NCBI RefSeq assembly: GCF_001194135.2
Contig: NC_068981.1
Location: 137,749,566 to 137,795,813, forward strand
DNA from: Octopus bimaculoides
Lineage: Eukaryota
Direction of reading: 5' to 3'
Length of the DNA stretch: 46,248 bases
Below, piece after piece: positions 1-45,052 of this stretch. The stretch's first letter is position 1; each line of letters starts with the position of its first letter. Both the position numbers and the translations under genes were made by a program. The notes under the pieces were generated by a model. It was not told the origin of the DNA and searched no databases. It was given only the letters and a program-made list of their open reading frames with translations.

Positions 1-320
1 ATATATATATATATACATACACACACATACTTGCAGTAAGTTAAGAGAAACTAATGGTTTTAAATTCATTCTGACTTAGGCATAAAATATTCATGTAACA
101 CCAAGGTTGCAGTGCTTCAGTTTTGCAAGCATTTGTTAAAGTAGACGGCTTACGTAAGTTTAAAGCCGTACAACTATGGCAAGACATAAATTCTCTATAA
201 AGAATTATGTTGAACAGTTAAGTAACTATCATTCATACCGTCATATTGAGTATGCAACGTTATAAAACAAAGGTGAAACCCAAAAGTTACACCCGATTGC
301 ACAATTCGTCATGGCTTTAG

Positions 321-380
321 TATCTCTTTCATTTGTTTCAGTCATTGAACTGCAGGCATGCTGGGACACTGCCCTTAAGA
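321..380 (-). mobile_element. SINE family A 3'-tail fragment
   Basis: Reverse complement AAGGGCAGTGTCCCAGCATGCCTGCAGTTCAATGACTGAAACAAATGAAAGAGATA resembles the family A tail seen at 15545-15598. Confidence 0.6.
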
Positions 381-389
381 GTTTAATAC

Positions 390-730
390 AGACACACTTT
401 GTATTTAATTTCAAGATGGTGGCCCACGATGAAGTCAGGTCAGCTATGGCTTTAACTGTTCTCACTGGAACTTTAGTAATTTGAAGGGCTTCTAGCATCC
501 GTGAGTGGGGAACAGAGGCAAAGACTTTCCTGTAATCTAGCCAAATCGAAACCAAGTTCGTCCTATGCTCTCGCACCTCTGACATCACAGTTTTGTTGAT
601 TAGCAGTTGCTGGGTATATCCCCAGTCTCCCTTCTTCTCAGCTGCTTGTTCAGCTGTGATAATGTTATTGGTTTCTCAATGGTCTTGGAGGAAGAGGTTT
701 AAACATGCTGTATATATTTTATACTTTAAG
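390..730 (-). mobile_element. R4/Dong-like LINE (family 1) reverse transcriptase fragment, 5'-truncated and degenerate
   Basis: Translation YKIYTACLNLFLQDH*ETNNIITAEQAAEKKGDWGYTQQLLINKTVMSEVREHRTNLVSIWLDYRKVFASVPHSRMLEAL matches the WLDYxKAFDSVPH RT motif of RLE-type LINEs. The 5' junction abuts (TATG)n at 731-757. Confidence 0.8.
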
Positions 731-9139: not shown

Positions 9140-9817
9140 GTCTCTAGCAGATTCAGCTGGTTTCCTTCAGCGTTTCCTAACCCAAGATGAGCGTTGACTT
9201 CATCATTTCGAGCCAGAGACAAAGAGACAATCCCTGCAGTGGAAACACCCCTCCTCACCTGCTGCAAAGGAAGCCAAGGTCATTTCATCTGTACGGAAGT
9301 TGATGACTTCAGTTTTTTAGGATGCAAAAAAGCATCGTGTTTATTGATTATCTTCACACAGTCAATGGAGAGTACTTTGCTACTTTACTGAGGCAGTTAC
9401 GAAACGATGTCAAAACTAAACGCTCAGGAAAACTGACGATATGTGTCTTGTTTCATCAGGACAATGCTCTAGCACACAAGTGCTTGATTTCAGTAGCTGC
9501 TGTGCGTGACTGTGATATTGAACTGATTGATCATCCTCCGTATTCTCATGATTTGGTCTCATATGACTTTCAGCTGGTCGCCAACATGAAAAAGCATATG
9601 GCAGAGAACCAGTATTGCAATTATGATGACGTCATATCTTCTGTTGACTTTTTTGTGAAACTGGATTAAAGCCTTTTCCCAATGAGATCTAAGTACTGCA
9701 ACACCAATGGAAGAGGTGAGAGGGCCGCAAGGGGGACTATGTTGAAAAATAAACCTCGTTTGGAAACATTCCATGAGAGTGTCTCGGTCAGCCTATGAAC
9801 ATTTCAACCGACCCTCG
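9140..9817 (+). mobile_element. Mariner (Tc1/mariner, D,D34D) transposase 3' fragment with 3' TIR; defective
   Basis: FLTQDE..HHFEPETKRQSLQWKHPSSP, VLFHQDNA (D at 9460), HPPYSHDLVSYDF (D at 9565; 34 intervening residues), GDYVEK*. Ends ...ACCCTCG followed by TA (9818-9819). Contains stops and frameshifts; 5' half is missing. Confidence 0.9.
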
Positions 9818-12894: not shown

Positions 12895-13700
12895 TTACAC
12901 AGAGTTTGACCACCTCCTGTACCTACACCTTAGCTCTTTCATGGCGTCTGATGTGGCTTTTTAAACCGGACAATGTTTTGAAAAAACACCCACACAGATT
13001 GCACCTCTGATTTGAACTACCAATACCTGCAGGTAAGTTCTGCTCATTGTGGACTTGTTATGAAAGGCATTTTAAACAATTAGAACAATTCCACCAAAAA
13101 TGCCTTCGTCATATTTTAATAATTAGATGGAATTCTTTTACTCCAAACACAGATATCCTTGCATCCCCTTAATTAAAACTATAATTTTGAGGAACCAATT
13201 GAGATGGTGTGGCCATATTGTTCGAATGGCAGATGAACGCATGCCGAAACAGCTGTTTTATGGTGAGCGTGCAGAGGGGAAACGCTATCGGCATAAACCT
13301 ATAAATGGGTTTAAGGATGGCATAAGCACTACTATGAAGTCACTTGGAATGGTTCCAGAAGATATAGAAACCCTCGCTTCAGATCGAGTTGGATGGCGAA
13401 CAAAAGTGTGGAATGGAATGAAAGCGGTTGAAGAGGCCAGGATAAGGCAAGCAAGACTCAAAAGATATTTAAGGAAGAATGTAAAGATCGAGAAGGTGAA
13501 TGACAATGACCTTTTTGCGCGCACAGTCTGTGACAGACCATGTCTGTCTTTGGCTGACCTCAAATCTCACCTGCGAACTCATGGAAAACACACTTCAACC
13601 AACTATTCTGACTATATGTCTGTGCACACGTTTGAACGTGGTGTATGCCAGAAGGCTTGCAAATCCAATGGGGGGTCTTAAAAGACATGTTAGGATCCAC
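12895..13700 (+). mobile_element. RTE/BovB-like LINE 3' fragment with two C-terminal C2H2-like motifs
   Basis: WTCYERHFKQLEQFHQKCLRHILIIRW, QLRWCGHIVRMADERMPKQLFYGE...GKR and DRVGWR are typical of the RTE ORF2 C-terminus. Followed by xTVCDRPCLSLADLKSHLRTH and (frameshifted) xGVCQKACKSNGGLKRHVRIH. Confidence 0.85.
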
Positions 13701-20560: not shown

Positions 20561-20911
20561 AAGGCTCCTTTCAGTTTCCGTCTACCAAATTCATTCACAA
20601 AGCTTTGGTCAACCAAGGATATAGTAGAAAACACTTGCCCAAGGTGACACGCAGTGGGACTGCACCCGGAACCATGTGGTTAGCAAGGAAGCTTCTTATT
20701 ACTTTACTGCCCACCAGGGTCTACACACAGAGGGGACAAACAAGGACAGACAAAAGGATTAAGTCGATTATATTGACCCCAGTGCGTAACTGGTACTTAT
20801 TTAATCGACCTCGAAAGGATGAAAAGCAAAGTCGATCTCCACGGAATTTGAACTCAGAACGTAGCAGCAAACGAAATACCGTCCGGCGCCTTACCACACA
20901 GCCACTCCTGC
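20561..20911 (-). mobile_element. SINE family A head interrupted by a nested 5'-truncated SINE family B
   Basis: Family A sequence stops at AAGCTTCTTA (20698) and resumes at CTTACCACACAGCCACTCCTGC (20890-20911). The intervening 20699-20888 is a family B body; CTTA appears on both sides. Confidence 0.8.
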
Positions 20912-21581
20912 ATCTACATGGATGCGTGTATGTNNNNNNNNNNNNNNNNNNNNNNNNNNNNNNNNNNNNNNNNNNNNNNNNNNNNNNNNNNNNNNNNNNN
21001 NNNNNNNNNNNNNNNNNNNNNNNNNNNNNNNNNNNNNNNNNNNNNNNNNNNNNNNNNNNNNNNNNNNNNNNNNNNNNNNNNNNNNNNNNNNNNNNNNNNN
21101 NNNNNNNNNNNNNNNNNNNNNNNNNNNNNNNNNNNNNNNNNNNNNNNNNNNNNNNNNNNNNNNNNNNNNNNNNNNNNNNNNNNNNNNNNNNNNNNNNNNN
21201 NNNNNNNNNNNNNNNNNNNNNNNNNNNNNNNNNNNNNNNNNNNNNNNNNNNNNNNNNNNNNNNNNNNNNNNNNNNNNNNNNNNNNNNNNNNNNNNNNNNN
21301 NNNNNNNNNNNNNNNNNNNNNNNNNNNNNNNNNNNNNNNNNNNNNNNNNNNNNNNNNNNNNNNNNNNNNNNNNNNNNNNNNNNNNNNNNNNNNNNNNNNN
21401 NNNNNNNNNNNNNNNNNNNNNNNNNNNNNNNNNNNNNNNNNNNNNNNNNNNNNNNNNNNNNNNNNNNNNNNNNNNNNNNNNNNNNNNNNNNNNNNNNNNN
21501 NNNNNNNNNNNNNNNNNNNNNNNNNNNNNNNNNNNNNNNNNNNNNNNNNNNNNNNNNNNNNNNNNNNNNNNNNNNNNNNNN

Positions 21582-22438
21582 GTAGTGGCGGACAAAAAAC
21601 AAGACAGGAAAACAAACGGAAAAGGCTATACGGCCAGACGGGAAAAATTATGTGTGTATGAACGCTGTGAGGCACGAACTTGAAAGTGGGGACAAAGTAA
21701 GTTCCCGTGTTTGCTCGGCGATAACCAAGGAAGAAAAGGATTAGTGACCGGAAGCATGTGACCATGCCGGTGTTAGGGGAGAGAGAGAGAGAGAGAGAGA
21801 GTGGTAGAGGGAGAAACAAAGAGAGGAAGTAGAAGAATAGGTGAGCAACGAGAGGAAAAAAGGAAGAGAGGAAGTACGAGGGGGGAAAAGGAGATACGTA
21901 ATAGTAACAGAGGAAGTACGAGAGGGATAAAGAGAAATACGTAGTAGTAACAGAGGAAGAACGAGAGGGGGAAAAAGTGATAGAGAAAGAGATAGAGTAG
22001 CATCAGAAAATATAAAGTTGAGATAACTACTTACAAAATTGGTGACGCAGGCGTTCGGTCATGTAAAAACAAATAATAAATGAGTGTATGTATATATACG
22101 TACAGGTATGTGCATACCGACATCCACCTGTATGTATAGGTGCATATCTGGGTACAGGATATTGCAAACAAAACGTAGACAAGAAAATAATGATAATCAG
22201 AGTACAGAAAACACACAAGCCACATAGAGAACATTTTCCTTCATCAGCTACCCCCGTTTTAACACCGGCGTTTCGAAGATCTGGGTAGGACGCATCGTTA
22301 AAACGGCTCTTCCCATGGACCGCAAATTAAATTTGTACACACAAATTAAACCTGTGCCATGGAGGAATGTAGTGGCGGACAAAAAACAAAACAGGAAAAC
22401 AAACGGAAAAGGCTATACGGCAAGACGGGAAAAATTAT
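21582..22438. mobile_element. Non-coding directly repeated element (~790-bp unit); Penelope pLTR/retrozyme-like on minus strand or mini-LTR-like on plus strand
   Basis: 21582-21649 is repeated at 22369-22438. Contains hammerhead motifs (minus strand), an internal ~42-bp GA-rich tandem repeat (~21870-21970) and a segment repeated at 26244-26401. Confidence 0.65.
22237..22306 (-). ncRNA. Candidate hammerhead ribozyme with non-circularly permuted strand order
   Basis: Minus strand 5'-CCGUUUUAAC GAU GCGU C^CUACCC AGA UCUUC GAA ACGC CGGU GUUAAAACGG GGGUAG CUGAUGA AGGA-3'. Helix I CUACCC/GGGUAG flanks GUC and CUGAUGA; helix III is GCGU/ACGC; helix II is short (3-4 bp with G-U). Confidence 0.55.
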
Positions 22439-22855
22439 ATATACGTCTGTGTTTGTGTACGTGTGTCTTAATCACCACAGCCTAACAATCGACAAAATTT
22501 CATCGATAGAGTAAAAGCTAGATTTTAAAAAATTGTTCGACTAAATTCTTCAAGCACAATGACTGAAAAACGTAAGAGAGGAAATGTAATATCAGATAAG
22601 GAGGAGTTTGATACCTTGATATCCAATATTAAGGTATGAATATCAATATCTCGGAGAGAGATGGCGAGAGAGAGAGAGAGAGATGGGGGGGGGGAGAGTG
22701 AGAGAAAGCAAGAGAAAGAGGGTGGTGGGAGTGTCTTCAACACTAGCAACTCTTGTCAGTTCCCCTCCCTGGGCCATTAACATCCTTAGATTAGAGGTGC
22801 GATTCTCCGAATACTCTCTAGCAAAAATGGATTGTTGATATTTCTTGTAAGCTAA

Positions 22856-23975
22856 GGCGGCGAGCTGGCAGAAACGTTAGCACGCCGGACGAGATGCTTA
22901 GCGGTATTTCGTCTCTCTTTACGTTCTGAGTTCAAATTCCGCTGAGGTCGACTTTGCCTTTCAACCTTTCGAGGTCNNNNNNNNNNNNNNNNNNNNNNNN
23001 NNNNNNNNNNNNNNNNNNNNNNNNNNNNNNNNNNNNNNNNNNNNNNNNNNNNNNNNNNNNNNNNNNNNNNNNNNNNNNNNNNNNNNNNNNNNNNNNNNNN
23101 NNNNNNNNNNNNNNNNNNNNNNNNNNNNNNNNNNNNNNNNNNNNNNNNNNNNNNNNNNNNNNNNNNNNNNNNNNNNNNNNNNNNNNNNNNNNNNNNNNNN
23201 NNNNNNNNNNNNNNNNNNNNNNNNNNNNNNNNNNNNNNNNNNNNNNNNNNNNNNNNNNCTATCTTACGGCCTGAGCTAAAATTTCGTCGAAGACGACTTT
23301 GGCTTTCATCCTTTCGGGATTGATGAAATAAGTACCAGTTGGACTCTAGGGTCCAACTGGTACTTATCGGCTTACTCCCACCCTCAAAATTGCTGGTCTT
23401 GTGCCCAAATATGAAACCGTTATTTCTTGTAAGGTATTTAATAAGTCCAACGTCGTAGGCGGCGAGCTGGCAGAAACGTTAGCACGCCGGACGAGATGCT
23501 TAGCGGTATTTCGTCTCTCTTTACGTTCTGAGTTCAAATTCCGCTGAGGTCGACTTTGCCTTTCAACCTTTCGAGGTCGATAAATTAAATACCAGTTGCA
23601 TACTGTGGTCGATCCAGTCGACTGGCCCCCTTCCCCAAGAATTTCGAGCCTTGTGCCTAGAGTAGAAAAGAATATTACACCTTATGTATTAAGGCTGACA
23701 TGTGGGGTTTCGATTCTACTAATAGTTTCATATTGTATTTTGACATGAGTATTCACTTCAAGGCAGTGATCTGGAAGAATCGCTAGTATGCCGGACGAAA
23801 TGCTTAGCAGCACTTCGCCCGTCTTCACATTCTGAGTTCAAATTCTGCCGAGGTCGACTTTGCCTTTTATCCATTACGGTTCGATGAAATAAGTATCAGT
23901 CGAGTACTGAGGCCGATGGAATTCATTATCCCACTCCGCCATAATTTCAGCCCTTACACCTATACTAGAAAGGAT
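22856..23975 (+). mobile_element. Cluster of four co-oriented SINE family B copies
   Basis: GGCGGCGAGCTGGCAGAAACGTTAGC...GAGTTCAAATTCC...GTCGACTTTGCCTTTCA at 22856-22976, 23259-23420 (partial), 23458-23673 and 23761-23975. Confidence 0.85.
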
Positions 23976-25872: not shown

Positions 25873-26243
25873 NNNNNNNNNNNNNNNNNNNNNNNNNNNN
25901 NNNNNNNNNNNNNNNNNNNNNNNNNNNNNNNNNNNNNNNNNNNNNNNNNNNNNNNNNNNNNNNNNNNNNNNNNNNNNNNNNNNNNNNNNNNNNNNNNNNN
26001 NNNNNNNNNNNNNNNNNNNNNNNNNNNNNNNNNNNNNNNNNNNNNNNNNNNNNNNNNNNNNNNNNNNNNNNNNNNNNNNNNNNNNNNNNNNNNNNNNNNN
26101 NNNNNNNNNNNNNNNNNNNNNNNNNNNNNNNNNNNNNNNNNNNNNNNNNNNNNNNNNNNNNNNNNNNNNNNNNNNNNNNNNNNNNNNNNNNNNNNNNNNN
26201 NNNNNNNNNNNNNNNNNNNNNNATATATATATATATATATATA

Positions 26244-26401
26244 AACAAATAATAAATGAGTATATGCATATATACGTACAGGTATGTGCATACCTACATC
26301 TACCTGTATATATAGGTGCATATATGGGTACAGGACATTGCAAACAAAACGTAGACAAGAAAATAATAATAACCAGAGTACAGAAAACACACAAGCCACA
26401 T
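26244..26401. repeat. Second partial copy of the 22070-22225 segment of the hammerhead-bearing element
   Basis: Near-identical (about 90% by eye) ACAAATAATAAATGAG...CACACAAGCCACAT. Ends just before the hammerhead region. Confidence 0.85.
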
Positions 26402-28217
26402 ATATATATGTGCTTACAAACCACTTTGAAACGCAATGATGACGACCATTGCGTTTCAGGACAAGAAGATAATTGAAAATCATTAGCAACTGCTGTACAT
26501 ACGATCCAACCAAAGACGCTCGAAGTGGGCCAGTTAGCAATAACAGCTACTTTGTCTTGCATATAATGTCTGATAAAAAAAAAAGACGCAATTGTCTCTT
26601 GATTGACAAACACCGAGAGAGCCTCAAATCATTACACCCCGTTGAGTTATATTATAAAAGGATACATGGAAGCTCGCAGTCTCTAACAGATGGTGTCATT
26701 TTGAATGCGTTTAATAATGTTTCAAATTAATCAATATTGACCCTGGAAAATAACAGCAGCAACTACAAGTCACAAGCAATCAGTGACACACAGAAACCTA
26801 CCATCGAGTTGTGTCTTTTACTCCATCTTATTCTGTTGCAATATGTATCACTCATCTTGTTTGTGTTAGCTATACTAAGAACGCTTGTTTCATTCACTTA
26901 TACGTTTACTCTATCTCCCAATATTCCTACGCTATCTTATTTTAATTACCAAACTACAAATAAACTCCTTAAGTTCTTTTATTATATTCGCTTTCTAGTT
27001 TGAAATATATTTCTATGGTGCTCCGCTTCTGCTTTTATGTTCCTATTAACGAGCAATTTTCAATGCTTCAAAGTTAACCTTAATTTCATAAACTGTAGAT
27101 AACTCTACATGGGATCCAAGTAAGGAATACCTCGAAATGCTTTATATTAAATTAGGAAGAAATTACACTGAAACACGGGTAATACTATTGTAATAAGTGT
27201 CTTACTCGAGCTTTTTAAAAAGGTTAATAAGGATCAAGGTAGAAACATCTTCTGTCTCTAAAGGGGTATTCTCGTTTCTGTGATGTAGTTTAGGCAATTT
27301 TATATATGTAGGCATCAGCAGACATTGCGAAGCCTAGCATTTATAGCAATGGTCTCTGGGGATGGTGAGAAATTGAAAGTTATGATTAAAAGTGGTTATT
27401 AAACAACTATTATCTACTATTTTGATAAGTAAACAGTTGTTATTATTGTTGTCGAACTCCAGATCGGCTCTGATCGAGTAGGTTTAATCAATGATTATAA
27501 GCATTCTAGTCATGACCATCACGTTGGTATATGTTATACAGGACCACATTAGCTTGCGAAGCAATTTTCCTTGCATCGATCTTCAGACGAGAACTATCAC
27601 AAGGCCGATTATTATTTTATATATATATTGGCGTAGGTGAGGTTTCCTTTTCGTGTTTTCATTTTTGTCATTTTTAATTGTATGCGTTTGGTGGCCTAAC
27701 GTTTACCTTCGTTGATGCTATTGCCCAGGGGCGTAATTAGGAAACACTCTTTTTTTTTAATTAATATTATGTGGATATTAGTCTAATTATGTTGTTTATT
27801 CCCTGAATTTATCTGCTTATTTCATCGTGCGTTTGCAAAAAAAAAAAATGCAATTGTGTTGTATGTTTGTTTAGACAAGCCTATTTCATTTATCAGAAGG
27901 TAATTTGTATATAGAAAATTTAGTTTTCTTTTTGGAAGTGTCTTGCGTTGCGTTGTATTTCATGGTGACTAATATTAACATTCATAGTTTAGTGTGTCTT
28001 ACGTTAAAACGGAAGTACGAGCTACTTACTTTGCATCCAAGTCAAATCGCTTTCACTATTACTTATCATGTTTCATGATGAGGACTGTTTCTGAAACTAT
28101 TATGAAATGACGAGACTCATCTACAAAAATGCATAAACTCCATAATCGTTATGTAGAGTGCTCTTTTCATTGGCATATGAGACTTGTATGATGCATCTAT
28201 GAATGTATGTATGTTTT

Positions 28218-31629: not shown

Positions 31630-31838
31630 GAACACGAAAGTTTGTTCTTAATTTTGGAACGAGGCCAGTAATTTTGAAGGGAGGGGCAAGTGGTACTCAG
31701 CTGATACTTATTTTATCGGCCTTGCAATGATGAAAGGCAACGCCAACTGCAGCGGAATTTTAACTTAGAACGTATGGGCCGGATGCACTAAGCATTTTTG
31801 TCCGGCGTGCTACCGATCCCACCAGCTCGTTGCCTTTT
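31630..31838 (-). mobile_element. SINE family B, diverged
   Basis: GATGAAAGGCAA...GCGGAATTTTAACTTAGAACG...CTAAGCATTT..GTCCGGCGTGCTA...CAGCTCGTTGCC is the reverse complement of the family B head and body. Confidence 0.7.
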
Positions 31839-43799: not shown

Positions 43800-45052
43800 A
43801 TCATCTAGGTATTTGTGCATATGTGTGTGTGTGCAGTATTTGGTGTTAGTGTATGCGCAGATTTGTATGTTTGTTTTATGGATGCGTTTTTATGTCTAGA
43901 TGCATGCATATGTAATTATGTGCTAAATTTTTGGAAAGTTTTACATATCTTTACAGTTCCATTGATGGCTTGAATCTGTAGTCTTCTAATCAGCCTTTTT
44001 CTTTCAGGTTTTGAGAACCCTAATTCTTCCAGGTTTTTGTTGAGGCAGTTCGTTACATATCCCAATGCCCCAACAATCACGGGTATGAATCTGAACTTGT
44101 AGTCTAGGTGGAGTATCTGTAAATTTCTCAGTAGCTCGGCGTAGTTGTTCTCTTTTTCTCTAATCTTTAGTGGGATGTTGACATCCGCAGGACAGGTGAT
44201 TTCTACTACTGTACAGAGTTTCTCTTCTCCGTCCCAGATTACTATATTCGGTCTATTATGTCTGCACTTTATTGAGGCTTTTATTGGGACATTCCACTAA
44301 TACTCTTTCATATTGTGAGTGGTAATGGCCTCTACCTCATTATGGGTTTTCATCTCCTTAGCCCCGGGGTTATCCTGTCGGCGGATTTCATTGTACAGTG
44401 TCTTGGCCACAACATCATGTCTCATAGGTAGGTAATACCGTGATGACATTTTTGGACAGCTGCTAATGATGTGGGTGATATCTTCGATACTGATTCCACA
44501 GAGTCTGCATCGATTATTACATTGTGGCGNNNNNNNNNNNNNNNNNNNNNNNNNNNNNNNNNNNNNNNNNNNNNNNNNNNNNNNNNNNNNNNNNNNNNNN
44601 NNNNNNNNNNNNNNNNNNNNNNNNNNNNNNNNNNNNNNNNNNNNNNNNNNNNNNNNNNNNNNNNNNNNNNNNNNNNNNNNNNNNNNNNNNNNNNNNNNNN
44701 NNNNNNNNNNNNNNNNNNNNNNNNNNNNNNNNNNNNNNNNNNNNNNNNNNNNNNNNNNNNNNNNNNNNNNNNNNNNNNNNNNNNNNNNNNNNNNNNNNNN
44801 NNNNNNNNNNAGATGATGTCGAAGAGATATGACACGGCATTCAAAGGCAGTCTGAATTGATGTTAGGCCCCTCCCTCCTTTATTTCGTTTTAGGTATAGG
44901 CGGTCTACATCGCTATTGATGTGAAAGTTGTTCGTGCTCGTTAGTATTTTTCGGGTCTTCACATCAAGGGCTCGGATTTCATCGATCGTCCAGTCAAGTA
45001 TCCCGAATGTCGGTATGAGTACTGGTACTGCAAACACATTGTGGGCTATTAC
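43800..45052 (-). mobile_element. R4/Dong-like LINE (family 1) 3' fragment with N gap
   Basis: VIAHNVFAVPVLIPTFGILDWT...DVDRLYLKRNKGGRGL, CRLCGISIEDITHIISSC, RHDVVAK, HNRPNIVIWD...VEITCP and YKFRFIPVIVGALG...FQKFST*. The 5' junction abuts (TATG)n from 45053. Confidence 0.9.

What the first reader, a model, noticed from the sequence alone, without database searches (positions are those of the whole stretch)
22237..22306. Candidate hammerhead ribozyme with non-circularly permuted (pseudoknotted) architecture in a dispersed repeat
Seen in sequence (minus strand): every hammerhead core element is present in exact register. GUC (C17 at 22289) is followed immediately by CUACCC, which pairs 6/6 with GGGUAG lying immediately 5' of CUGAUGA (helix I). 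GAA-ACGC pairs with the GCGU preceding C17 (helix III). AGGA after CUGAUGA can pair weakly with UCUUC before GAAA (helix II, 3-4 bp with an extra nucleotide). Established: canonical types I-III all keep the cyclic order CUGANGA -> GAAA -> UH. Here the order is UH -> GAAA -> CUGANGA, which no circular permutation gives. Natural non-circularly permuted hammerheads have been reported (Eckert, Friedrich, Weinberg & Weinberg, NAR 2023), and small hammerheads are typical of Penelope-like elements. I cannot tell whether this cephalopod variant is among those described. Inference: self-cleavage between 22289 and 22288 would process transcripts of this repeat.
Basis: partly seen in the sequence, partly recalled or inferred. 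Interest (0 to 1): 0.9.

Follow-up and report, generated by a model that had tools for sequence, protein, structure and literature searches.

The report
Lone permuted hammerhead look-alike, unproven
The octopus-like DNA really does spell all the parts of a hammerhead self-cutting RNA in the rare S-G-C order, but it is a single unconserved copy with a very weak second helix, so it is most likely a chance look-alike that one simple cleavage assay could settle.

Summary
The block order is cleavage site, then GAAA, then CUGAUGA. That is the published "type SGC" hammerhead of Eckert et al. 2023.

It is rare by chance in one window. I expect 0.01 motifs of this stem quality in any block order, and about 2e-5 if the canonical G10.1-C11.1, C15.2-G16.2 and GUC are also required. 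A 2.7 Gb genome would still hold roughly one to several hundred chance motifs.

The evidence against a working ribozyme:
- Helix II is only G-C, G.U, A-U, at +1.8 kcal/mol against -4.8 and -7.1 in validated SGC ribozymes.
- A stronger competing register pairs G8 and A9.
- The published fourth helix is absent. The G-C linker instead pairs 10/10 with the 5' leader in an ordinary palindrome.
- The core (22227-22368) is single-copy in the window; only its flanks are repeated.
- No relative turned up in 140 kb of Octopus vulgaris DNA, JGI metagenomes, the protein collections or Rfam.

Conservation, covariation and transcription could not be tested. My verdict is that this is most likely a fortuitous, non-functional motif (about 0.6). 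A real animal-genome SGC hammerhead stays possible (about 0.15) and is cheap to test.

The parts
22297..22306 (-). 5' leader CCGUUUUAAC. It is one arm of a perfect 10-nt inverted repeat ('P4') with 22254-22263.
   Evidence: the P4+III hairpin evaluates to -14.8 kcal/mol
22289..22293 (-). Block S, first part: GCGU (helix III 3' strand, U16.1 at 22290) plus C17 (22289). The predicted scissile bond lies between 22289 and 22288.
22283..22288 (-). Block S, second part: CUACCC, the helix I 3' strand. It pairs 6/6 Watson-Crick with 22248-22253.
   Evidence: duplex -8.1 kcal/mol
22275..22282 (-). Linker AGA plus UCUUC, the putative helix II 3' strand with C11.1 at 22275.
   Evidence: Only UUC pairs contiguously with GGA.
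22268..22274 (-). Block G: G12 A13 A14 (22274-22272) and A15.1-C-G-C (22271-22268), the helix III 5' strand.
   Evidence: helix III duplex -3.4 kcal/mol
22254..22267 (-). G-to-C linker CGGU + GUUAAAACGG. Its last 10 nt pair with the 5' leader, not with a 3' tail as in published SGC ribozymes.
22241..22253 (-). Block C: GGGUAG (helix I 5' strand) plus CUGAUGA (C3-A9).
22235..22240 (-). Extra A (22240) and GGAAA, the putative helix II 5' strand. Pairs formed: G10.1-C, G.U, A-U, then an A/C mismatch, then A-U. It can also close a local hairpin, GGAA-AAUG-UUCU.
22313..22362 (.). A second, adjacent imperfect palindrome (CCATGG...CCATGG). It is not part of the hammerhead reading.
22369..22438 (.). 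Flanking repeat, 97% identical to 21582-21651. That copy starts at the edge of N gap 20934-21581.
22061..22226 (.). Flanking repeat, 93% identical to 26237-26402. The similarity stops exactly at 22226/22227, 10 nt past the putative helix II strand.

Best explanation
This is a fortuitous hammerhead-like constellation in non-coding, repeat-rich octopus-type DNA, not an evolved ribozyme.

A common kind of imperfect palindrome supplies 'helix III': a 10-bp outer arm plus GCGU/ACGC. Its loop happens to carry CUACCC, which is complementary to the GGGUAG that follows the palindrome and precedes a CUGAUGA heptamer.

If the minus strand is transcribed, the RNA should mostly adopt the long hairpin, with or without the helix I pseudoknot. 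The helix II strands should either stay unpaired or pair in the more stable register GAAGG/UCUUC, which buries G8 and A9. Efficient self-cleavage between 22289 and 22288 is therefore not expected.

Shown: the sequence anatomy, the chance rates, the helix energies and the lack of other copies. Inferred: that it is inactive and not under selection.
For: - The competing register GAAGG/UCUUC scores -2.3 (stacking -6.4 against -2.3).
- A two-nucleotide helix II mutant of SGC-3 abolished cleavage.
- The fourth helix that all published SGC ribozymes need is absent (M8/M9 tests). The linker instead pairs with the 5' leader.
- Perfect 10-nt inverted repeats with loops of 80 nt or less occur at 17 places in this window.
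- The fold of the region is no more stable than shuffled sequence (z = +1.5 and +0.14).
- The core 22227-22368 is single-copy in the window.
- No copy of the core or of the 22369-22438 repeat occurs in 140 kb of Octopus vulgaris DNA, although the window's SINEs are abundant there.
- There were no matches in JGI metagenomes, among spurious-ORF proteins or in Rfam.
- The chance expectation is 0.01 per window in any order. That is about 600 per 2.7 Gb at this stem quality, and about one per genome once canonical pair identities are required.
- Real O. vulgaris DNA gives loose hits at about the simulated rate.
Against: - The core is letter-perfect: CUGAUGA, GAAA and GUC are all present.
- The quasi-conserved C15.2-G16.2 and G10.1-C11.1 pairs are also present. 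I estimate these identities cut the chance rate about 500-fold, to about 2e-5 per window in any order and about 5e-7 for SGC order with a short linker. This estimate is my arithmetic applied.
- Helix I is 6 Watson-Crick pairs.
- The 3-5 nt I-to-II linker and the extra nucleotide after A9 match validated SGC ribozymes and metazoan min-hammerheads.
- Stems I+III(+P4) sum to about -27 kcal/mol before any pseudoknot penalty, against a nested MFE of -17.8.
- A single-copy GCS motif in a bacterium, found by pattern search alone, did cleave in vitro.
Confidence: 0.6

Rival explanations
1. It is a genuine type-SGC (non-circularly permuted, doubly pseudoknotted) hammerhead encoded in an animal genome. 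Helices I and III plus a short helix II, with an extra A after A9, assemble the canonical core. The leader:linker helix (P4) takes the place of the published fourth helix. The minus-strand transcript cleaves itself after C17 (22289), leaving almost the whole ribozyme on the 3' product.
For: - Perfect core and canonical 15.2-16.2 and 10.1-11.1 pairs.
- S-G-C order with a 3-5 nt linker and an extra nucleotide after A9, as in the validated SGC-1 and SGC-3.
- Low chance rate for this exact architecture: 2e-5 to 2.7e-4 per window.
- The G-C linker lies in a helix here too, only with the other partner strand.
- Helix I plus helix III is energetically competitive.
Against: - Helix II is 5-9 kcal/mol weaker than in validated examples and is out-competed by a register that pairs G8/A9.
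- P4 runs with no linker at all into the distal end of helix I, which may be sterically incompatible (inference).
- There are no other copies, no covariation and no transcription evidence.
- All known SGC ribozymes are in RNA replicons with a hairpin ribozyme opposite, and none is seen here.
Confidence: 0.15
2. It is a scrambled or truncated relic of canonical hammerhead-bearing repeats. Octopus genomes carry type-I 'min-hammerhead' repeats reading CUGAUGA-A-GG...CC-GAAACGUU-GUGUU. The C block here, with its own local hairpin GGAA-AAUG-UUCU, would be the 5' half of such a motif cut off at the 22226 repeat boundary. The S and G blocks would be decayed pieces or coincidences.
For: - A repeat family of about 165 nt with a canonical min-hammerhead layout exists in O. 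vulgaris.
- The candidate shares CUGAUGAAGG with it.
- 'CGAAACGCCGGUGUUAAAAC' resembles that family's 'CGAAACGUUGUGUUAACAAC'.
- A second 'GA-ACGC CU GCGU C' unit in canonical G-to-S order lies at 22058-22044.
Against: - None of these similarities is significant. Smith-Waterman against shuffles gives p = 0.05-0.10. The motif scan scores no higher than background sites. The comparison of 22330-22227 with 22065-21940 gives p = 0.9.
- The family itself is absent from the window.
- The 22058-22044 unit lacks one A of GAAA and has no helix I partner.
Confidence: 0.12
3. The two adjacent palindromes (22254-22306 and 22313-22362) are the functional or structural unit. They could be the end of a transposable element, a hairpin RNA precursor, or a protein-binding site upstream of a possible exon at 22559-22636. 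The hammerhead boxes would then be irrelevant.
For: - Two neighbouring inverted repeats.
- Repeats abut both sides.
- CpG observed/expected is 1.5 against 0.77 for the window.
- An ATG ORF with a consensus splice donor lies 250 nt away on the other strand.
Against: - Hairpins of this size are common in the window.
- There is no Rfam hit and no other copy.
- The exon is unverified.
Confidence: 0.1

Closest known systems
Type-SGC hammerhead ribozymes (HRIMA-1 motif and type-SGC variants; Eckert, Friedrich, Weinberg & Weinberg, NAR 2023, PMC10085705)
   Same: - Block order S-G-C.
- All core nucleotides.
- The helix I strand joins the helix II strand through a very short linker.
- One extra nucleotide between A9 and G10.1.
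- The G-to-C linker is engaged in a helix.
- Overall size is about 70 nt, with cleavage near the 5' end.
   Different: - Helix II is 3 weak pairs instead of 5 strong ones.
- The linker pairs with the 5' leader, extending helix III, rather than with the 3' tail, which clamps helices I and II in the published forms.
- The helix I sequence is unrelated to the invariant HRIMA-1 helix I.
- The context is genomic DNA of an animal, not a metatranscriptomic RNA with a hairpin ribozyme on the other strand.
- It is a single sequence with no covariation.
GCS-1, the single type-GCS hammerhead-like sequence of Caballeronia peredens (same paper)
   Same: It is an orphan, single-locus, non-circularly permuted motif found by pattern alone, with no covariation and no obvious biological role.
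   Different: GCS-1 has stems of 7, 4 and 8 pairs by my scanner and was shown to cleave, though incompletely, in vitro. This candidate has stems of 6, 3 and 3+1 pairs and is untested.
Metazoan minimal type-I hammerheads of Penelope-like elements and related repeats (Cervera & de la Pena 2014, PMC4209133)
   Same: [quoted passage not shown]
   Different: Those have the canonical C-G-S order, a hairpin helix II of 4-6 bp and almost no helix III. They act as dimers, lie in PLE terminal repeats or tandem arrays, and occur as large families with covariation. None of that applies here.

Membership tests
Hammerhead ribozyme (any topology) | Conserved core: C3-U4-G5-A6-N7-G8-A9, G12-A13-A14, A15.1-U16.1, H17 | tested here: met
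   CUGAUGA at 22247-22241, GAA at 22274-22272, A 22271 pairing with U 22290, C17 at 22289
Hammerhead ribozyme (any topology) | Helices I and III directly abutting the core | tested here: met
   Helix I is 6/6 Watson-Crick and helix III is 4/4 Watson-Crick, with C15.2-G16.2
Hammerhead ribozyme (any topology) | A stable helix II starting with G10.1-C11.1 | tested here: not met
   G10.1-C11.1 forms only if A22240 is treated as an extra nucleotide. There are 3 contiguous pairs (G-C, G.U, A-U) at +1.8 kcal/mol. The competing register GAAGG/UCUUC scores -2.3 and buries G8/A9.
Hammerhead ribozyme (any topology) | Site-specific self-cleavage 3' of H17, abolished by core mutations | not testable with these tools
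   Needs an in vitro transcription and cleavage assay
Hammerhead ribozyme (any topology) | Conservation and covariation of the helices among homologues | tested here: inconclusive
   No homologue was obtainable: window, 140 kb of O. vulgaris, metagenomes, protein route. The source genome itself cannot be searched with these tools.
Hammerhead ribozyme (any topology) | Match to Rfam hammerhead covariance models | tested here: not met
   No hit even at E<=10. This is expected for a permuted order. The models also miss the canonical min-hammerhead-like repeat of O. vulgaris, so the result carries little weight.
Type-SGC hammerhead (Eckert et al. 2023) | 5'-to-3' block order S, G, C | tested here: met
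Type-SGC hammerhead (Eckert et al. 2023) | Helix I strand joined to helix II strand by about 3 nt | tested here: met
   AGA (3 nt) if helix II is counted as 5 positions, AGAUC (5 nt) if only contiguous pairs are counted. SGC-1 and SGC-3 give 0-2 nt by the same scanner.
Type-SGC hammerhead (Eckert et al. 2023) | A fourth helix between the G-C linker and the 3' tail, essential in SGC-3 mutants | tested here: not met
   The 3' tail AAAUGUUCUC... has no complement in the linker. The linker pairs 10/10 with the 5' leader instead.
Type-SGC hammerhead (Eckert et al. 2023) | Occurrence in RNA-derived contigs with a hairpin ribozyme on the opposite strand | tested here: not met
   The context is animal genomic DNA. 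No hairpin-ribozyme match on either strand of 21900-22700. Published habitat and molecule table.
Metazoan PLE-type minimal hammerhead | Canonical C-G-S order with a hairpin helix II, located in PLE terminal repeats or tandem copies | tested here: not met
   A type-I scan of the window finds none. No PLE ORF lies near. There is a single CUGAUGAAGG in the window.

The most novel reading that the evidence does not exclude
The first non-circularly permuted (type-SGC-like) hammerhead ribozyme encoded in an animal genome. It would use a new peripheral arrangement, with the 5' leader pairing to the G-C linker instead of the 3' tail, and an unusually short helix II. It would cleave minus-strand transcripts after position 22289.
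Probability: 0.15. Interest if true: 0.8.

Novelty: not a real feature. Interest (0 to 1): 0.35.

Why it matters
If it cleaved, it would take non-circular RNA permutation beyond soil and freshwater viroid-like RNAs and two bacterial or soil DNA cases into metazoan genomic DNA. It would also show a second way of bracing the permuted fold. And it would suggest that pattern searches restricted to the three circular topologies miss ribozymes in animal genomes.

If it is a chance look-alike, as I judge more likely, it is a useful calibration. A letter-perfect hammerhead core with two good helices is expected about once per cephalopod-sized genome by chance. Helix II strength and family conservation, not the core boxes, are then the discriminating evidence.

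Tried and rejected
1. Rfam at gathering threshold on the whole window and at E<=10 on 21900-22700. No ribozyme family matched.

2. Other copies in the window, using blastn (word 7-9) and nhmmer. There were none for the core.

3. External copies:
- The look-up of encoding contigs with four window ORFs: not on record.
- The search for homologous proteins with three spurious reading frames across the element: no hit.
- Two metagenome pattern scans, one for the S..G..C signature and one for a 20-mer of the 97%-identical flank: no hit.
- PLSDB plasmids, to exclude vector contamination: no match.

4. Harvesting related genome DNA. A LINE ORF of the window has Octopus vulgaris homologues. Four loci (140 kb) were fetched. 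The window's SINEs are there at 80-92% identity, but neither the candidate core nor its flanks are.

5. A canonical type-I or type-III reading that uses a second 'GA-ACGC CU GCGU C' unit at 22058-22044, beyond the 166-nt repeat. I rejected it because one A of GAAA is missing, there is no helix I partner, and the two regions are not significantly similar.

6. Homology of the candidate to the O. vulgaris min-hammerhead-like repeat. It was not significant.

7. Homology of the sequences next to the two copies of the left-flank repeat. There was none.

8. A 25-aa possible exon peptide (22559-22636) as a route to the orthologous locus. The query was too short for the tool, and no longer coding exon was found nearby.

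9. CpG content. The candidate is CpG-rich (o/e 1.5) but is not an outlier in the window.

10. tRNA scan. It found none.

Full report
OBSERVATION. On the minus strand the window reads, 5' to 3': CCGUUUUAAC(22306-22297) GAU GCGU(22293-22290) C(22289) CUACCC(22288-22283) AGA(22282-22280) UCUUC(22279-22275) GAA(22274-22272) ACGC(22271-22268) CGGU GUUAAAACGG(22263-22254) GGGUAG(22253-22248) CUGAUGA(22247-22241) A(22240) GGAAA(22239-22235) AUGUUCUC. GUC carries C17 at 22289. CUACCC pairs 6/6 with the GGGUAG that abuts CUGAUGA. GAA-ACGC pairs with GCGU. The helix II candidate is weak. The block order is cleavage site (S), GAAA (G), CUGANGA (C).

WHAT THE ORDER MEANS. Eckert et al. (PMC10085705) divide the hammerhead into blocks S, G and C. 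Types I, II and III are CGS, GSC and SCG. The other cyclic class (SGC, CSG, GCS) is non-circular and doubly pseudoknotted. The candidate is therefore 'type SGC' on paper.

I rebuilt the validated SGC-1 and SGC-3 from the oligonucleotide table and ran them through my own descriptor scanner. Both come out as SGC with helices I/II/III of 6-8, 5 and 5-6 pairs. Both have one extra nucleotide (U) between A9 and G10.1, and a 0-2 nt linker between the helix I and helix II strands.

The candidate comes out as SGC with helices of 6, 3 and 3 (+A15.1-U16.1). It has one extra nucleotide (A22240), which puts G10.1 opposite C11.1, and a 3-5 nt linker. An extra nucleotide at this position is also typical of metazoan Penelope-type minimal hammerheads (PMC4209133). 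As an A, it moderately lowers activity in the CChMVd hammerhead (PMC3705267).

IS IT MORE THAN CHANCE? My scanner covers all six orders, a span of 120 nt or less, G.U pairs allowed, and 0-1 extra nucleotide.
- In the real window the candidate is the only hit at I>=5, II>=3, III>=3.
- In 7000 first-order Markov windows of the same length and composition, 69 hits reached the candidate's stem lengths in any order (0.0099 per window). Fifteen did so with helices I and III all Watson-Crick, and five were SGC.
- An importance-sampling run (4 million CUGANGA contexts) gives, for SGC order: 2.5e-3 per window; 2.7e-4 with an I-to-II linker of 5 nt or less; 7e-5 with all-Watson-Crick I and III; and 2e-5 with both conditions.
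- Requiring in addition C15.2-G16.2, G10.1-C11.1 and C17 multiplies these rates by about 0.002. This is my arithmetic from base composition, not a simulation.
- In 140 kb of real Octopus vulgaris DNA, loose hits occur at about the simulated rate and none reaches medium stringency.

In sum, the motif is improbable in one window (about 1e-2 down to 1e-6, depending on how much of the canonical detail is demanded). A 2.7 Gb genome has about 65,000 such windows, so between about one and several hundred chance motifs of this quality are expected per genome. How many windows the scan has read is unknown to me. Statistics alone therefore do not decide the matter.

WHAT SPEAKS AGAINST A WORKING RIBOZYME.

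(a) Helix II.
- The helix II of SGC-1 and SGC-3 scores -7.1 and -4.8.
- The same two strands pair better in the register GAAGG/UCUUC (-2.3; stacking -6.4 against -2.3). That register consumes G8 and A9 of the core.
- The 5' strand can also close a local hairpin, GGAA-AAUG-UUCU.
- In SGC-3, a two-base disruption of helix II abolished cleavage.

(b) The fourth helix.
- In all published SGC ribozymes the G-to-C linker pairs with the 3' tail and clamps the distal ends of helices I and II. Disrupting it (M8) kills SGC-3, and compensation (M9) restores it.
- Here the 3' tail has no complement.
- The linker instead pairs 10/10 with the 5' leader. Together with GCGU/ACGC this forms one long imperfect hairpin (-14.8 kcal/mol), whose 3' strand runs into helix I without a single linker nucleotide.
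- Whether that is compatible with the hammerhead fold cannot be decided here. By analogy, the published linker also sits in a helix, so I do not treat it as excluded. But it is not the published design.
- Perfect 10-nt inverted repeats with short loops occur at 17 places in this window, so the hairpin is unremarkable.

(c) Overall fold. The nested fold of the region is no better than shuffled sequence.

CONTEXT AND RELATIVES.
- The window is a gap-rich draft (20 N runs, 37% G+C) full of microsatellites and tRNA-type SINEs. A LINE ORF in it has its best matches in Octopus vulgaris, so the cephalopod attribution is reasonable.
- The flanks of the candidate are repeated in the window. 22061-22226 is 93% identical to 26237-26402, with similarity ending exactly at 22226/22227. 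22369-22438 is 97% identical to 21582-21651, a copy that begins at the edge of N gap 20934-21581.
- The core 22227-22368 consists of two adjacent palindromes and has no second copy. 'In a dispersed repeat' is therefore unproven. A second copy could hide in the gap.
- Attempts to reach other copies all failed: exact-protein look-ups of ORFs over the element, a protein search with three spurious frames, two metagenome pattern scans and plasmids.
- I then harvested 140 kb of O. vulgaris genome around homologues of the LINE ORF. The window's SINEs are there in dozens of copies at 80-92% identity. Neither the core nor its flanks appear.
- Conservation and covariation, the decisive evidence, remain untested because no tool here searches cephalopod genomes by DNA.

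ALTERNATIVE READINGS TESTED.
- A second unit, CC-GA-ACGC-CU-GCGU-C, lies at 22058-22044 on the same strand, just beyond the 166-nt repeat. It has the canonical G-to-S order. It lacks one A of GAAA and has no helix I partner. The pattern is expected 0.1 times per window, and the two regions are not significantly alike.
- The O. vulgaris sample contains a repeat of about 165 nt whose consensus has a textbook minimal type-I hammerhead layout: GACAC CUGAUGA A GGCUG...CAGCC GAAACGU U GUGUU.
- The candidate shares CUGAUGAAGG with it and has a G-block region that looks similar. However, Smith-Waterman against shuffles gives only p = 0.05-0.10. A motif scan ranks these sites no higher than background, and the family is absent from the window.
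- A relic origin is thus possible but unsupported.

MECHANISM AND PROBABILITIES.
- Most likely (about 0.6), this is a fortuitous constellation built on an ordinary palindrome. If transcribed, the RNA forms the long hairpin, perhaps with the helix I pseudoknot (stems I+III+P4 sum to about -27 kcal/mol before any pseudoknot penalty, against a nested MFE of -17.8). The catalytic core is not held together because helix II is too weak and mis-registers.
- A real SGC-type ribozyme remains possible (about 0.15).
- A scrambled relic of canonical hammerhead repeats gets about 0.12.
- Some unrelated role for the palindromes gets about 0.1.
- The precedent of GCS-1, a single bacterial sequence found by pattern alone that cleaved incompletely in vitro and whose biological relevance the authors left open, shows two things. 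Such orphans can be active, and activity alone would not prove function.

COMPARISON AND NOVELTY.
- It works, if at all, like a type-SGC hammerhead.
- It is not a member of the published HRIMA-1 or SGC-variant families. The helix I sequence, the fourth helix, helix II strength, the molecule type and the ribozyme partner all differ.
- No later paper in the library reports SGC hammerheads in animals.
- If real, it would be a new variant of a known kind and the first in a metazoan genome. On present evidence I classify the ribozyme as not established.

NEXT STEPS. A whole-genome copy search with covariation analysis and a one-day in vitro cleavage assay with a G5 mutant would settle it.

Noticed in passing
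L003 2741-2900 (-); L002 30185-30660 and 40310-40640 (Octopus vulgaris GCA_951406725.2): A repeat family of about 165 nt (at least 6 copies in 140 kb, some adjacent or inverted). Its consensus reads GGTTCGAAATTTCCCCAAGACAC CTGATGA A GGCTG GAGGGTATAT CAGCC GAAA CG TT GTGTT AAC. That is a canonical minimal type-I hammerhead layout: an extra nucleotide after A9, G10.1-C11.1, and a palindromic ACGU. It sits downstream of a tRNA-B-box-like GGTTCGAAAT. Several copies carry core-killing changes. Rfam does not detect it.
   Followed up: partly
window 22044-22058 (-): CC GA-ACGC CU GCGU C is a second ACGC/GCGU hairpin in canonical G-to-S order. It is one A short of GAAA and lies just past the 166-nt repeat that follows the candidate. 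A near-miss CUGAUGC lies at about 22003-21997 (-). Neither is significant by alignment.
   Followed up: yes
window 22855-22976, 23457-23578, 23760-23867, 20807-20881, 31731-31836: Copies of a tRNA-type SINE (GTTCAAATTCCGC...), shared with O. vulgaris at 80-92% identity. The first two copies are 100% identical and sit on either side of N gap 22977-23258, which looks like a redundant contig end from scaffolding.
   Followed up: partly
window 22559-22636 (+): A short ATG-initiated ORF (MTEKRKRGNVISDKEEFDTLISNIK) ending at a consensus splice donor, AAG|GTATGA. It lies about 250 nt from the candidate on the opposite strand and may be a first exon. It could not be checked because the query was too short for the protein search.
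   Followed up: no
window 22084-22148 (+) and its copy near 26260-26325: A long AT-rich palindrome inside the left-flank repeat gives sub-threshold miRNA-precursor-like Rfam matches (mir-3149, 24.5 bits against a gathering score of 100, E = 0.04). This is most likely a low-complexity hairpin.
   Followed up: no
window 9322-9669 (+); 13127-13681 (+); 241-588 (-); 44297-45037 (-): Transposon debris. There is a mariner/Tc1-like DDE transposase fragment (Pfam DDE_3, E = 1.4e-5) and a LINE ORF C-terminus with 63-89% identical 'hypothetical proteins' in Octopus vulgaris. Two reverse-transcriptase-like ORFs give no Pfam hit. No Penelope-like element was recognised.
   Followed up: partly
window 26427-26458 (+): A perfect 11-bp hairpin, TGAAACGCAATG...CATTGCGTTTCA, lies 25 nt from the other copy of the left-flank repeat. 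It also contains GAAACGC and ATGATGA. It is not homologous to the candidate.
   Followed up: yes
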